Shown: piece by piece, positions 32,882 to 38,577 of the stretch | Layout: each line of letters starts with the position of its first letter | Numbering within the stretch: the first letter of the stretch is position 1 | Assembly: GCA_038496445.1 (NCBI GenBank) | Contig: JALMLS010000183.1 | Span: 73,982-137,981, forward strand | Direction: 5' to 3' | DNA: 64,000 nucleotides | Origin: Trichosphaerium sp. ATCC 40318 | Taxonomy: Eukaryota; Protista; Tubulinea | The notes under the pieces: model-generated | The model's input: only the letters and a program-made list of their open reading frames with translations | Databases searched by the model: none | What the model was told of the DNA's origin: nothing | Made by a program: the position numbers and the translations under genes

Positions 32882-33941
32882 ATGGGCAACAAGACTACTT
32901 TATCGAGACAAGAGCAGGCTGCCTTTAAAAAAACTTACAGCTGTACACAATTTGAATAAACGTTGTTGAATGCACCTTAGTGCATAATTTAACGCGAAAT
33001 CTACCCTTTTGTAGTTTTCTTGCTTTTTTTATGCTAATTTGCATCTTAGTACCGCGAGGGAAGTTTAAATCGATGGTAAAAGCGTTTAAACGAGAAGCAA
33101 AACAAAATAAGGGCAAGATTACCCGAGAACAATTTTTAAACACCTATGCACGTCATGGTATCATGGATATTGAACTGGGTAATCAAGTATTCGATTCATT
33201 TGATAGAGACAAAAACGGGTACAAATCTTTTTTATGTATTCATTCGTCGTGAAACCTCTCCTATTCGTAGATTGAGCGTCGTAGACTCAAACGCCGGTTT
33301 TTCAATAACTACCAACTTTAAACCGTTTTACTCACAACTCTATAGACTTTTAGATATTCGAGAGTACTTATCACTTATGGGAGTTGCATATGGCGGTACT
33401 TTAGAGCAAAAATTAAAAGGTGTGAAAATAATTGCCAAAAGCCATTTTAAATACTTGCCACATACTAATTTTCCAATCAACAGCTTCTTTCGAAGTGTTT
33501 GATAAAGATGGTGATGGAGAATTGAGCAAAGACGAAATCCGTGATATCATAGTGATTATAATCAAACAAATTGAGAGAACAAGGCTAAGAGAGGGTTCAT
33601 CCAACCCTTACATTACTGGAGAGACGCCAGTACGTACATCTAACAAATTTATGGACGCAACACGTTAGGATGTTAATGCATGTCCTATTATGGAATTATG
33701 ACTTAATTATATTGCACGTGTAGGTTACAATCGACAAAGACGGACAAGCTAAAATTGAAAAGATGTTGAACGAAGTTTTTGATGTTGTTGACACAGATGG
33801 TAGTGGTACAATAGATGAGGATGAGTTCATAACCGGGTTCAAAAAACATGGAGGTATGTCACTTACACTCGCAGTTTAAATTTAGAAATGAACGACTGAC
33901 ACACTTGGATAGACGTATGTGAATTTTTTAATCAGTTTTAA
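32882..33941 (+). CDS. N-myristoylated EF-hand protein, neuronal-calcium-sensor/calcineurin-B-like
   Basis: MGNKTT start; EF loops DRDKNG|LLDIREY, DKDGDGELSKDE, DTDGSGTIDEDE; GTLEQKLK|ASFEVFD. Confidence 0.85.
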
Positions 33942-34111
33942 CCAACAACGCCTACTCCCCCAAACCCACACACTGTTTTCATCAAGATGTGAACTATTGT
34001 ATTTGTAATATAGATTCAATAAATACATTGTTTCGAACCAAAAGGTCTCAACTGTTTACTAGTGTGTCACTCAGTTTTGTTTATTATTTATTGACATTGA
34101 CTTTGTTAGAG

Positions 34112-37100
34112 TTATGCTGTAACCAAGTTGAGTATTTCTTTTGAAACAAGGTTAACCTTGGTATTGGCGTTTGTTGAGTATGTTTTCAGTTGCGATTCAA
34201 AAGTCTGTGCTACACCACCACGAATGGCTTTTTGACCATGAAGCAGTGTTCCAACTGCCACAAGGCAATTGTATAATATATCAGCATTCTGAGTATCGCT
34301 AGCAACTTGTCTCATTACCTGAAAAAGTTGATGGTTAATATCCAATTTTCTCATCTTAAACAATCTTGACAACAGAAAATAGACGTACAGTAAAGCTCGA
34401 TGATATAAACCTAACTGAGATACTATTATTGTTCATCTTTGACAACATTATAGCCATACTACGCCAAAATATTAGTCTGTTATGAGGTTTGTAATCAAAA
34501 AAAAAAACAAACTTTGGTACAAGCCAAAATATGTGAACGTACTTTATCATACAAGTACTGAGCTGCGATAAAAGAGATCTTTTAGATTTTTCATTAGTGC
34601 AAAACATGCCAATTACAGCCTACATAACAACAACATTTTAGCAAAAAATAGTGAACAGTGCACGTGAGCAGTACTTTATCAATTGTCACTTCAATCAGTT
34701 TTCTAGATCCTTCAAAAGCAAGGGCGTTTGTCATAACTCTCAGTTTTAGAAGTTTTATAGGAAGTGAGTCATCTTTGAACTTGAGAAGAGCAGCAATCAA
34801 AGAATCTTTTTCATCGTTAAACTTTAGGCTACAAAGAATTTTGTTCGCTGTTTTGTTTACAAGAGCAGCACGAACCAAGTCCAGAGCTTTTTTTGAAATA
34901 AGTTTTAGAAACCACAGTATATTTAGGAAGGTACCAGGAAACATTTTGTTTTGTGGCCAACTAGATATAATTTTTTGTAGAGGTTGAAGCATTGACATAT
35001 TTACCGAATCATCAGACTCAATTGCTTTGACCAGTGCTTTCAATCCATTAAGTTCATCTTGAGATAACCTGAGTGCTGTATCTACCTAATACAATACATA
35101 AATTTAAAACCAAAAGATGGAAGGAATCAAGTACTTGTCCTTGGAATTGTACTAGCTTTGACATTATCGCTTGAAACTTTGTTGCTTTTTGTACAACATA
35201 CTCCTTCTATGACCGATTAGATTTTGTTCAAGACAAACAAAGTGAATGTTAAATTTGGCAGCGAAGGATCTACGCACAACAGGAAAGTGACGGGGATTTG
35301 AGGCACTAGGACCATCTGTACCACAAGTCATAATAGATCCACCAGCTGTAAAGGAATATTACTATACAAATTGGCACAAAACTGACGTACTAGAAAATTG
35401 CCATGAAGTAATATCATGCGCTACAATAACCCTTTAGTAATCCCATAATAACACAAAGGTGCGCTTACCTTGATTCAACCCGCCAGTACCAGCAGTGAAT
35501 CCAACAAAGGCTTCTTTAGCACCAACACAAGCAGAGACATCAACCTAAGAATTGTTTTTGAATAAAGAGTTAAACATTTTCGGATTGTGTTGTACCTTAG
35601 CATGAACCACCAGTTTTTCGTTAAGGAATACTTGTAATACACCTCCTCCTGAAGATATTATTCTAACATTATGTAGTGCACCTCCATTAAGCTTTGGAAT
35701 ATCGCCACTGCAACCCAAAGAAAATTTATGATGTGAAGAATTAGGCTTATCTCTTCGTGTATGTATACTAACAAATAAAGTCTGTTAAAATAATTTCTAG
35801 TTGAGCCTTGCATTACCTAATATGATTGCCACTAGGATCCTGGCAACGGTCCCATGTTTCGTATGTATCAAATTCAACAGCGACACTAGCACATATTATT
35901 AGCAGAACGTCACTTCTAGAATGTCCTTTACCTGTGTGGGATACCACCATATCCCATATCGCAACCACCACGACCTATTGCTCGAGCTGATTCATTTTGT
36001 ATGACCTAATAACAGCCATACATTAGCAACAAACACTTGAATAAAAAAGGGGAATTCAAAAAAGTACAAAAGCAAATCCATCAGCGCCACTACCAGATAT
36101 TTGTGCTGAAAAACAAACTACAAATGGATCTGCGATATTAACAGCACTGCTTGACCAAGCAGCACCAACTTTATCATTCGCAGCTGGTGTTAATCTCAGT
36201 CTATCACCTACATGCATCTATTAAACTTGAGCCTAACATCACTTCCCATACCAACAACGCGAGCATCACCAACACACGTAATTGAAGCGCTACTAAAAGA
36301 AGATACTTTGAAGACTTCTTTCGCTTGTTCCAGCTCTAAAGAAAATAAAATTAATCACGTGATGCTTGTCCCTTTCACTCTCTAGCCAGAAACGCACTTA
36401 GTTTTGCAATCTTTTCTATAGCTTCCCCCATCTCTCCGCGCTGTTTTCTCCATGCTTCTGAACCAGAAACTCTTCCACCATAAGCACCTTGGTTCAAATG
36501 TGCATTTGCATTCGCTAATTCTTCCAACTCAGCCAAACGCCTTGATGCCACAAACTGGCTTCGTGATTGTGGCATGTTTGCAAGATAAAATTGGTTGATT
36601 TGGGCAAGAGTATGTGTCAACCACTCCTCTGAAACCTCAAGGAAAAAATGAGCAATTTCAAGAAACTAAAGAAAAAGGTACAAGATTTCTTCTTGACATC
36701 ATTTCTGGAGCGCCATAGTTAGATACATATCTTCTTGTAACATCAACCACTTCTTCAGCTATACAATAATGCTATTTGAGGTGAATTATCATTGAAAATG
36801 ATGCGTACAGGAAAACGCCAATACATAATTAAGTTTTTTTTTCCATCCCTTGTCATACAACAAGGCACAATCGTAACTTGCTTCACAAGAGTCACAGTGA
36901 ATCCACCTCTTTTGATCAGTACTATAAACTTCTGTCCAGACATGATCAGACCAATCCCTAACATATCGAGCATCATAACCAAGTGCACGACAGCATAGCG
37001 TGAAGCTAAAAGAAAAAATGTTAACTCAGATTTTGCCAAAAAGCAGCCTACCAATTGGCATACTCGCCACATCGTCCTTTTCGCGTCTGAAGCAGTTTCC

Positions 37101-37787
37101 CAGCTGTTCAAGTATAAGCCAAAAGGGTAGACTTTGATTCCATGTTTTAAAATAAAATCACGTGCGGTTGTTATAACGAGGGAAGCGAGTGACAGTTGGA
37201 CACAATGTACATTTGTATATTTCAACTCTACCAGCACCATGTTTCATGTCATCAGGTGTTGGTTGACCCATACCTAGTTGGTTTGTCTTGCCCTTTAATA
37301 ACATACTCAGTAATCCACAATAAAGACATGAGGATATTAGTCATTAGGTACCTGACAAAAGTGGCAAGGAGGGGCGTTGACCTTTGTTTCAGAAAAAATC
37401 AGTTTAACTTTTTTTTGAGAACATTGTCTTATTTTTGTTGAATAGTCTTTTTTTAAACGGCTTACCCATGTAAAAAACTCGTTTTTCCACCATTTTAACA
37501 ACTGTACTATAAATTCGTCTTTTGCTGAAGGTAATTTATCATCATTCGCTTCAGCGCGTTTTCTTAGCTCATCTATGGGAATACAAGACAATGCTTGCGC
37601 CTAGAATCGATTTTGGTTAAAATAAATCTAAACCAACACAATTACGAACAAATTGCTTTCTACAACGCAACCACGCGTATTGCGTCGCATGAAGCTAATT
37701 TAAACAAAAAATCAAAATACTCACCTGTAACACCTCATCTTCGTAAGCTAAGACTTGCATTCTACAATTCTCAATGATGCTCTTCAT
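34112..37787 (-). CDS. PNG1: Cytosolic peptide:N-glycanase with C-terminal legume(L-type)-lectin and PUL domains
   Basis: YEDEVLQ|[20 protein letters not shown], CxxC pairs, RFPRYNN|[52 protein letters not shown]; then lectin ([24 protein letters not shown]) and PUL (SWPQNKMFP|[16 protein letters not shown]). Confidence 0.9.
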
Positions 37788-38577
37788 TTTCACTGCTAAT
37801 AAGTTCTATTTGATTGCGCCTTGGAAATGTTTTTTGTTATTATTAATACCCACAAATTTGAATTCAACTTATTTCAACGTTGTGTCACTCGTTTGTTGTC
37901 AGCCCACATTAGTCGAAAGTAGTGCCAACTATAGCAGAGATACGTGAAAATACAATCACGTGTTAAACGGATCAGTCCATTTGGGTTGATGGTAAGAGAT
38001 GGCATGCGAATGCTCAACTTGAAGAACAATGTATGTGGTTCACTGAGTAACAACATGGCGAAAGTAAGGGCTGGCATGAAGATGGTGCAAGAATGGACAT
38101 CGTGTTGGAGGATTTGTTAAAGCATTTGTACTTCTTTACTCTCGTCATGGAAGAATCATAGCACAGTAGTTTTGCTTACTTGTACAAAAACACAGCTGCA
38201 ATTGTTCACAGTTTTCTCACAGTTGTTGTTTGGCATACGCTAAGCATTTCATTCACATGATCGATAAAAGCGATTGTAACGCCCTCAGGACACAACGCTC
38301 AAAACTGCTTGAAATTTCGCTAAACTACGCAAGCCCATTTGCAGTGGCTTTGTGTCCTAGTGAATAAACCACCATAGAATTGTTGAAAGGAACTCACAAT
38401 TTTAAAGGTGAAGGCCTTCTGTTGCCATAATTAGGCTTACAATACTATTGAATAAGCCTTTGGGCGCATACAAGATCACTTTTATAGCTTGTTATGCTTG
38501 AACGCTATGAGAAAAAGGCGTCAACTTTTTATGTCAACTTTATTCAAAGTTTTCAAAACAGTTGTATATCTACGACC

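What the first reader, a model, noticed from the sequence alone, without database searches (positions are those of the whole stretch)
34112..37787. PNGase with a transglutaminase core + legume lectin + PUL architecture: possible convergent ERAD design
Seen: after the complete PNGase core the same spliced frame continues into an L-type lectin domain ([58 protein letters not shown]; ~35390-36300) and then a PUL domain ([29 protein letters not shown]; ~34112-35290). Established: animal NGLY1 uses an N-terminal PUB domain to bind the p97/Cdc48 C-terminus and a PAW domain to bind high-mannose glycans; PUL domains (PLAA/Doa1) also bind the p97 C-terminus and L-type lectins bind glycans. Inference: the same two functions have been rebuilt from unrelated modules. 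I do not know this architecture from described PNGases.
Basis: partly seen in the sequence, partly recalled or inferred. Interest (0 to 1): 0.8.

Follow-up and report, generated by a model that had tools for sequence, protein, structure and literature searches.

The report
PNGase fused to lectin and PUL
An amoeba-type genome carries a real, expressed 22-exon gene joining the cytosolic de-glycosylating enzyme PNGase to a legume-type lectin and a Cdc48/p97-docking PUL domain, but the same three-part protein is already in public databases for more than a dozen protists, so it is a new member of a known, little-discussed kind.

Summary
On the minus strand, 37787 to 34112, 22 exons give one open frame of 811 codons. 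The order is PNGase core (intact Cys-His-Asp triad, two CxxC motifs), then an L-type lectin, then a PUL domain.

Spliced contigs from two public RNA-type runs confirm 11 of the 21 introns. The two domain junctions are not bridged by any contig. They rest on frame continuity and on collinear mapping of all exons onto a family profile.

The novelty claim fails. PNGase+lectin was published for Dictyostelium and Naegleria in 2012. The full core+lectin+PUL protein is in public databases for:
- Naegleria gruberi (UniProt D2V850), N. lovaniensis, Willaertia and Acrasis
- Balamuthia, Arcella and Rhizamoeba (the closest relative)
- Diphylleia and several environmental sequences

That makes 17 clusters, plus core+PUL forms without a lectin.

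The functional idea is reasonable but untested:
- The PLAA pocket residues that hold the p97 Leu-Tyr tail are conserved here.
- Among 180 PNGase homologues, 26 carry PUL, 49 carry PUB and none carries both.
- The lectin lacks the canonical Ca/sugar-binding Asn.
- "Convergent rebuild" is not shown. The direction of change is unresolved.

No paper I could search discusses the PUL fusion. The scan had already noted this same stretch once, in an overlapping window.

The parts
34112..37787 (-). Whole coding region: 22 exons, 2436 nt, 811 codons plus stop. Exons (high-low): 37787-37725, 37600-37466, 37381-37352, 37292-37166, 37103-37052, 37005-36809, 36758-36682, 36635-36398, 36335-36243, 36207-36068, 36005-35932, 35885-35817, 35767-35596, 35544-35469, 35420-35391, 35345-35281, 35206-35135, 35085-34935, 34886-34675, 34619-34543, 34458-34416 (alternative donor after 34389), 34354-34112 (alternative acceptor before 34318)
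   Evidence: Frame and phase bookkeeping. Spliced contigs. Collinear mapping on the family profile and on single homologues.
36398..37787 (-). Exons 1-8: short N-terminal helical region, PNGase transglutaminase-like core and its C-terminal helical extension
   Evidence: Pfam Transglut_core 7e-8 and Rad4. 53-58% identity per exon to database PNGases.
36891..37071 (-). Catalytic triad codons: Cys 37071-37069 (GRCGEY), His 36944-36942 (DHVWTE), Asp 36893-36891 (HCDSCE)
   Evidence: Read directly from the sequence. These columns are invariant in alignment A1 of nine homologues.
37200..37381 (-). Two CxxC zinc-site motifs: CHFC in exon 3, CTLC in exon 4
   Evidence: The cysteine columns are invariant in A1.
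37104..37165 (-). 62-nt intron that must use a GC donor (c|gcacgt ... acag) to keep [22 protein letters not shown]
   Evidence: Sequence reading. Exons 4 and 5 abut on the family profile at 103-143 and 145-160. There is no RNA coverage here.
36426..36476 (-). [17 protein letters not shown]: the conserved junction motif that Pfam counts as positions 1-19 of PAW. Here, as in other lectin-type PNGases, it is followed by a lectin rather than by the rest of PAW
   Evidence: Pfam PAW positions 1-19 only, E 1.3e-4. The same holds in L003, P0005 and P0009.
35391..36335 (-). Exons 9-15: L-type (legume-like) lectin domain. GADGFAF at 36088-36068; [22 protein letters not shown] is exon 12, 35885-35817
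   Evidence: Pfam Lectin_L-type_dom 4.5e-6 and Lectin_legB. Profile positions 348-564. One 530-nt spliced contig spans 36175 to about 35390.
36208..36242 (-). Putative 35-nt GT-AG intron between exons 9 and 10. It is the shortest in the gene. Unspliced, the frame hits a stop
   Evidence: Exons 9 and 10 map to adjacent residues 351-377 and 379-427 of Naegleria lovaniensis P0047. No read covers it.
34112..35345 (-). Exons 16-22: a 21-residue linker that ends in the PUL start (NPRHFP), then the PUL (armadillo-like) domain up to the stop codon
   Evidence: Pfam PUL 3e-9 and 1.4e-3. Profile positions 579-826. Spliced contigs at 100% identity cover 35206 to 34440 and 34271 to 34101.
34870..34941 (-). 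PUL pocket motif F-P-A-L-D-L-V-R (equivalent to PLAA F611, D615, R618), split by the 48-nt intron 34934-34887
   Evidence: Alignment. Residue roles from PMC2804184. The intron is confirmed by contigs of two runs.

Best explanation
This is a single expressed gene for a cytosolic peptide:N-glycanase of the lectin-type class that is widespread in protists and early-diverging fungi. It belongs to the subclass that also carries a C-terminal PUL domain.

Shown:
- The transglutaminase-like core has the full Cys-His-Asp triad and both zinc CxxC motifs.
- An L-type lectin domain follows the conserved GR.SGS..WR..RGE.G junction, at the point where animal NGLY1 carries PAW.
- A PUL domain follows a short linker.

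Inferred:
- The core removes N-glycans from retro-translocated or otherwise cytosol-exposed glycoproteins.
- The lectin domain helps hold the glycan or the substrate.
- The PUL domain docks the enzyme on the C-terminal Leu-Tyr tail of the Cdc48/p97 hexamer. Deglycosylation would then be coupled to substrate extraction, which is the job done by the N-terminal PUB domain in animal NGLY1.
For: Gene structure and expression: one frame through 22 exons. Spliced contigs from two studies confirm 11 introns.

Domains: Pfam hits exon by exon. Exons map collinearly on a profile of nine tri-domain proteins.

Active site: triad and zinc motifs are present and sit at invariant columns of the family alignment.

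Same architecture in single database proteins, some from Trinity transcripts:
- N. gruberi D2V850, PUL 4.8e-22
- Rhizamoeba saxonica P0180, PUL 2e-22
- Balamuthia P0004, PUL 3e-43
- Arcella, Acrasis, Willaertia, Diphylleia and others

Cdc48 docking:
- Eight residues of the PLAA pocket for the p97 tail (I551, K554, F611, D615, R618, L657, L658, R661; PMC2804184) are conserved in the window. They include the three mutated in yeast Doa1.
- PUL and PUB are mutually exclusive: 26 with PUL, 49 with PUB, 0 with both, of 180 PNGase homologues (Pfam columns).
- A sister-type protein has thioredoxin+PUB at the N-terminus with core+lectin and no PUL (P0003).
Against: - No read bridges the core-to-lectin or lectin-to-PUL junction.
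- One intron needs a GC donor and one is only 35 nt. Neither has RNA support.
- The lectin lacks the Asn that binds both Ca2+ and sugar in legume lectins (pea N125). It reads YETWDR, as in Balamuthia and Naegleria; Arcella and Rhizamoeba keep the Asn.
- One PLAA pocket-wall residue (N697) is not conserved.
- PLAA's PUL is thought to have ligands other than p97 (PMC2804184).
- Many lectin-type PNGases have neither PUL nor PUB, so Cdc48 docking is not obligatory.
- No biochemical test exists for any PUL-bearing PNGase in the papers searched.
Confidence: 0.75

Rival explanations
1. The gene is a real tri-domain PNGase, but the accessory domains do something else. The PUL would bind a different acidic or internal Leu-Tyr-Gly-type ligand rather than the Cdc48 tail. 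The lectin fold would be a degenerate, non-sugar-binding scaffold or protein-interaction module.
For: - The canonical Ca/sugar Asn is missing from the lectin.
- PMC2804184 argues that PUL has conserved surface outside the p97 pocket, can bind internal LYG motifs and probably has other ligands.
- Many lectin-type PNGases work without PUL or PUB.
Against: - Eight pocket residues for the Leu-Tyr tail are conserved, including the three validated by mutation.
- PUL and PUB are strictly mutually exclusive on PNGases.
- The lectin keeps the GADGF Asp and four of the metal ligands (E, D, D, H).
Confidence: 0.18
2. These are two or three neighbouring genes (PNGase, lectin, PUL), or alternative transcripts that end after the core, and the continuous frame is a reading artefact.
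For: - No contig bridges 36475-36175 or 35391-35206.
- The run at 100% identity covers only the PUL part. The other run covers only the lectin part and the end of the core.
Against: - There is no stop or plausible start at either junction.
- Exon 16 carries the linker and the PUL start together. Exon 9 carries the end of the core extension (split codon) and the lectin start.
- The introns at the junctions are 35-74 nt, which leaves no room for a promoter.
- The exon order matches single-ORF proteins and Trinity transcripts in eight or more genera.
Confidence: 0.04
3. This is a decaying copy (pseudogene). The GC 'donor' and the 35-nt 'intron' are really lesions that break the frame.
For: Both features are unusual for this gene, whose RNA-confirmed introns are 46-84 nt with GT-AG ends. 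Neither feature is covered by reads.
Against: - Downstream exons are transcribed and correctly spliced.
- There are no stops in 811 codons, and the catalytic and pocket residues are intact.
- Both junctions restore exactly the residues expected from homologues: RYNN-P-GKLL, and adjacent mapping on P0047.
Confidence: 0.03

Closest known systems
Tri-domain protist PNGases: Naegleria gruberi 'peptide N-glycanase' (UniProt D2V850 / XP_002679728.1), N. lovaniensis A0AA88KP77, Willaertia magna KAL9650934.1, Acrasis kona A0AAW2Z820, Balamuthia mandrillaris KAL6068640.1, Arcella intermedia A0A6B2KXB5, Rhizamoeba saxonica EP01130_P003355, Diphylleia rotans EP00002_P020144
   Same: - Same order: transglutaminase core, conserved GR.SGS junction, L-type lectin, PUL.
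- All window exons map collinearly on them.
- Same conserved PUL pocket motifs.
- Rhizamoeba is closest, with per-exon identity of 53% in the core, 46% in the lectin and 40% in the PUL.
   Different: - No close orthologue exists. The window's own protein is not in the 15-billion-protein collection.
- The N-terminus is short, as in Rhizamoeba. Balamuthia and some others carry a ubiquitin-like N-terminal extension.
- The Ca/sugar Asn is lost here, as in Balamuthia and Naegleria, but kept in Arcella and Rhizamoeba.
Dictyostelium discoideum PNGase (Q55FC8; Gosain et al. 2012, PMC3502110) and other core+lectin PNGases (Acanthamoeba L8GYR5, Mucoromycota, chytrids, Sphaeroforma)
   Same: PNGase core followed by a legume-type lectin domain. 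The Dictyostelium enzyme was shown to deglycosylate.
   Different: They end after the lectin, with no PUL. Dictyostelids and Physarum instead have an N-terminal ubiquitin-like domain.
Animal NGLY1 / PNG-1 (PUB + core + PAW)
   Same: - Homologous catalytic core, 45-50% identical.
- Same junction motif after the core.
- One glycan-directed module and one module for the p97 C-terminal tail.
   Different: - The glycan module is PAW, not an L-type lectin.
- The p97 module is an N-terminal PUB, not a C-terminal PUL.
- PUB was looked for in and upstream of the window gene and not found.
PLAA / Doa1 / Ufd3 (WD40 + PFU + PUL; PDB 3EBB)
   Same: Homologous PUL domain. The Balamuthia PUL hits 3EBB at 1.8e-16. 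The pocket for the p97 Leu804-Tyr805 is conserved.
   Different: There are no WD40 or PFU domains. The PUL is attached to an enzyme instead of ubiquitin-binding modules.

Membership tests
Cytosolic PNGase (Png1/NGLY1, transglutaminase-like) | Pfam Transglut_core / Rad4 match | tested here: met
   Exon 6 ORF: Transglut_core 33.2 bits (cut-off 23), E 7e-8; Rad4 6e-4.
Cytosolic PNGase (Png1/NGLY1, transglutaminase-like) | Cys-His-Asp catalytic triad and two CxxC zinc motifs | tested here: met
   Cys 37071-37069, His 36944-36942, Asp 36893-36891, plus CHFC and CTLC. These are invariant columns in A1.
Cytosolic PNGase (Png1/NGLY1, transglutaminase-like) | Deglycosylating activity | not testable with these tools
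   Needs an enzyme assay.
L-type (legume-like) lectin domain | Profile match over the whole beta-sandwich | tested here: met
   Single exons score below Pfam cut-offs (best 27 bits, E 4.5e-6). Exons 9-15 nevertheless cover positions 348-564 of the family profile in order. Their homologues score Lectin_L-type_dom at 1e-23 to 1e-34.
L-type (legume-like) lectin domain | Metal and sugar-binding residues (Asp of GADG; Glu, Asp, Asn, Asp, His of the VEFDT..N..DP..H loop) | tested here: inconclusive
   The Asp of GADGFAF and E, D, D, H are present. The Asn that binds Ca2+ and sugar (pea lectin N125) is replaced (YETWDR).
PUL domain (PLAA/Doa1/Ufd3) | Pfam PF08324 match above the curated cut-off | tested here: met
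   37 bits against a cut-off of 25.5, E 3e-9, on 34597-35085. The C-terminal part scores 1.4e-3.
PUL domain (PLAA/Doa1/Ufd3) | Pocket residues that hold the p97/Cdc48 C-terminal Leu-Tyr | tested here: met
   Equivalents of I551, K554, F611, D615, R618, L657, L658 and R661 are conserved. N697 and A654 are not (residue roles from PMC2804184).
PUL domain (PLAA/Doa1/Ufd3) | Binding to Cdc48/p97 | not testable with these tools
   Needs a pull-down or ITC. The organism's Cdc48 is not in the window.
Tri-domain protist PNGase (core + L-lectin + PUL) | All three domains in this order in one polypeptide | tested here: met
   One frame through 22 exons, with collinear profile mapping 24-826 of 863. The two junctions are supported by frame and homology but not by a bridging read.
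NGLY1-type PNGase (PUB + core + PAW) | N-terminal PUB domain | tested here: not met
   No PUB hit in any exon. tblastn of N-terminal regions of homologues, including PUB-bearing P0003, finds nothing upstream.
NGLY1-type PNGase (PUB + core + PAW) | C-terminal PAW domain | tested here: not met
   Only PAW profile positions 1-19 (the junction motif) match. A lectin follows.

The most novel reading that the evidence does not exclude
On PNGases, PUL and PUB would be interchangeable docking modules for the Cdc48/p97 tail. They never co-occur in 180 homologues, and they are attached at opposite ends of the same core. The core+lectin(+PUL) design is found in Amoebozoa, Heterolobosea and CRuMs. It would then be an ancient eukaryotic solution at least as old as the animal PUB+core+PAW design, rather than a late convergent rebuild. 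No paper in the searchable library describes or tests a PUL-bearing PNGase.
Probability: 0.35. Interest if true: 0.5.

Novelty: new member of a known kind. Interest (0 to 1): 0.3.

Why it matters
PNGase accessory modules are swapped freely around a constant core and a constant junction motif. The glycan-side modules seen are PAW, L-type lectin, Jacalin and F5/8 type C. The Cdc48- or ubiquitin-side modules seen are PUB, PUL, ubiquitin-like, thioredoxin and AZUL.

The PUL/PUB exclusivity is a neat natural experiment. It suggests that tethering to the Cdc48 tail is the selected function. It also gives a simple testable prediction for amoebal ERAD.

For this window the practical result is a sound gene model and a correction: the architecture is not new.

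Tried and rejected
- The whole-library profile-free search with the 163-aa PUL ORF found only one 164-aa metagenome fragment (P0001). So the window's protein and any close orthologue are absent from the collection. That search said nothing about the architecture elsewhere.
- The ESM-Atlas look-up with one exon was uninformative.
- PDB searches with the PUL ORF gave only chance-level hits, and with the lectin exon a weak one (legume lectin 7elv, E 0.58).
- The metagenome scan with the lectin exon ORF found nothing. The second scan, with the core exon, gave 80 loci.
- Only one of those loci (L003) showed lectin exons. Its ORF stops right after the lectin.
- The alternative splice choices at exons 21/22 (donor 34416 or 34389; acceptor 34354 or 34318) are all in frame. 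Homology could not settle them.
- The maximum-likelihood tree of the core region (174 proteins, quick mode) is unresolved at depth. It cannot say whether PUL was gained once or several times; starred branches force at least 3 changes.
- No upstream ubiquitin-like or PUB exon was found.
- The organism was not identified beyond 'amoebozoan-like'.
Full report
**What is there.** The window is eukaryotic (36-46% G+C, short introns). On the minus strand between 37787 and 34112 there are runs of stop-free coding sequence in changing frames. I built a 22-exon model by eye and checked it by phase arithmetic, exon by exon. It totals 2436 nt, or 811 codons plus TAA at 34114-34112. Nineteen of the 21 introns are 35-62 nt; the others are 74, 84 and 124 nt. 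Donors are often GTAC.

Two features are unusual:
- The intron after RFPRYNN (37165-37104) must use a GC donor to give [19 protein letters not shown].
- The intron between exons 9 and 10 (36242-36208) is only 35 nt.

**Domains.** I never assembled the joined protein or sent it to any tool. Pfam results:
- Transglut_core 7e-8 and Rad4 on exon 6.
- PAW model positions 1-19 only, on the [17 protein letters not shown] motif of exon 8.
- Lectin_L-type_dom 4.5e-6 on exon 10.
- Weak Lectin_legB hits on exons 12 and 14.
- PUL 3e-9 (37 bits, above the 25.5 cut-off) on exons 18-19, and 1.4e-3 on exon 22.

The catalytic Cys (37071-37069), His (36944-36942) and Asp (36893-36891) and both CxxC zinc motifs are present.

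**Expression and splicing.** Only contigs of two small-share runs were available. Laid on 33900-37950, they are spliced.
- One run at 100% identity covers the PUL part. Its joints are 35135|35085, 34935|34886, 34675|34619 and 34543|34458, and one contig's alignment ends exactly at the exon start 35206.
- A second run, at 95-99% identity and probably another strain or species, has one 530-nt contig running from 36175 through five joints to about 35390. That covers most of the lectin.
- The second run also has a contig over 36475-36635. Its loose end matches the upstream exon, which confirms joint 36682|36635.

Every one of these joints equals my model. No contig bridges 36475 to 36175 or 35391 to 35206, so a single transcript is not directly shown. 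Three arguments support it:
- There is no stop or start at either junction.
- The junction introns are 35-74 nt.
- Exons 9 and 16 each carry sequence from both sides of a domain boundary.

**Relatives.** A search of 1.8 billion representatives with the PUL ORF found only one 164-aa fragment. The window's own protein is therefore not in public protein sets.

A metagenome scan with the core exon returned 80 PNGase loci. Their ORFs show how variable the accessory modules are:
- core+L-type lectin (L003)
- core+Jacalin (L005, L007, L010)
- thioredoxin+F5/8C+core (L024)
- core+AZUL (L046)
- PUB+core+PAW (L055)

I used the 600-aa ORF of L003 as a query by reference. I then used a profile of nine hits. 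These showed that core+L-lectin+PUL proteins are already public. I confirmed them with my own Pfam scans, where PUL scored 3e-43 to 3e-12, and with accession look-ups:
- Naegleria gruberi D2V850, annotated 'peptide N-glycanase'
- N. lovaniensis, Willaertia magna and Acrasis kona
- Balamuthia mandrillaris, Arcella intermedia and Rhizamoeba saxonica
- Diphylleia rotans
- several unnamed environmental or Logan proteins

That is 17 clusters in the two listings. Core+PUL proteins without a lectin also exist, in Echinamoeba, Ancoracysta and environmental samples.

The window's exons map in order onto a profile of the nine proteins, at positions 24-826 of 863. Exons 9 and 10 fall on adjacent residues of the N. 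lovaniensis protein, which supports the 35-nt intron. Rhizamoeba is the nearest relative, at 53% (core), 46% (lectin) and 40% (PUL) per-exon identity. This fits earlier notes of this scan that call the genome amoeba-type.

**Literature.** Gosain et al. 2012 (PMC3502110) described the core plus beta-lectin-legume architecture for the Dictyostelium PNGase. They showed that enzyme to be active, and described the same architecture for the N. gruberi protein D2V850. They did not mention the PUL domain, which D2V850 has. Searches combining PNGase or N-glycanase with PUL, lectin and transglutaminase found no paper describing the fusion. Reviews list PUB and PUL as the only two domains known to bind the p97 C-terminus (PMC5389986).

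**Mechanism.** In the PLAA PUL-p97 structure, Leu804 and Tyr805 of p97 sit in a pocket formed by N547, Q550, I551, K554, F611, D615, A654, L657, L658, R661 and N697, with R618 bridging D615 through a water. Mutating I551, D615 and L658 equivalents in yeast Doa1 abolished Cdc48 binding (PMC2804184).
- Aligned on the family profile, the window keeps I, K, F, D, R, L, L and R at the equivalent places. The motifs are AIMSKL in exon 17, MFP|A|LDLVR across the exon 18/19 joint, and KLLKLR in exon 19. So do all nine homologues.
- In a local HMM census of 180 PNGase homologues, 26 have PUL, 49 have PUB and none has both. One lectin-type protein (P0003) has thioredoxin+PUB at the N-terminus and no PUL.

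I therefore think Cdc48-tail docking by the PUL is the most likely role. It is inferred, not shown.

The lectin is less clear. It keeps the GADGF Asp and the Glu, Asp, Asp and His metal ligands. It lacks the Asn that binds both Ca2+ and sugar in legume lectins.

**Evolution.** A quick maximum-likelihood tree of the core does not resolve deep branches. PUL-bearing proteins fall in several poorly supported places. Balamuthia (with PUL) groups with Acanthamoeba (without). Whether PUL was gained once and lost often, or gained repeatedly, stays open. The claim of 'convergent rebuild' is not established.

**Verdict.** The functional analogy is reasonable and now has some comparative support. The architecture itself is already catalogued in sequence databases, and half of it is published. 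This is a new member of a known kind, of modest interest.

Noticed in passing
window 37104-37165 (-): The intron after exon 4 needs a non-canonical GC donor (c|gcacgt). No GT in the right phase preserves the conserved RYNNPGKLL. There is no RNA coverage to confirm it.
   Followed up: partly
window 34112-37787 (-): Splice donors of this gene are strongly biased to GTAC (11 of 21). Nineteen of the 21 introns are 35-62 nt. This may be a signature of the genome's splicing machinery.
   Followed up: no
window 32980-33700 (+): The convergent neighbour looks like a multi-exon EF-hand calcium-binding protein (FDSFDRDKNGY, FEVFDKDGDGELSKDEIRDII). One contig, 100% identical to the window over 33911-33996, runs on into unlike sequence at 33911.
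   Followed up: no
L003:25-324 and L004:3-881: In a GC-rich environmental relative, a thioredoxin (CGPC) and a PUB-like ORF lie just upstream of the core+lectin ORF, separated by a stop. The database protein P0003 (901 aa) has thioredoxin+PUB+core+lectin in one chain, so the stop is probably a retained intron.
   Followed up: partly
L005:9065-10987, L007:2203-4026, L010:1676-3196, L024:28-2550, L046:80-2344: Environmental PNGases carry other accessory modules: Jacalin lectin after the core, thioredoxin plus an F5/8 type C (discoidin) domain before the core, and an AZUL zinc domain after the core.
   Followed up: partly
window 36426-36476 (-) and homologues: What Pfam models as the first ~20 positions of PAW (GR.SGS..WR..RGE.G) is conserved in PNGases that have no PAW at all. 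It behaves as the end of the core, the fixed point after which different modules are attached.
   Followed up: partly
P0007 (Acanthamoeba castellanii L8GYR5) against P0004 (Balamuthia): These two group together on the core tree, yet only Balamuthia has the PUL. The cause is either loss in Acanthamoeba or a truncated gene model. A 757-aa Logan member of the Acanthamoeba cluster hints at longer forms.
   Followed up: no
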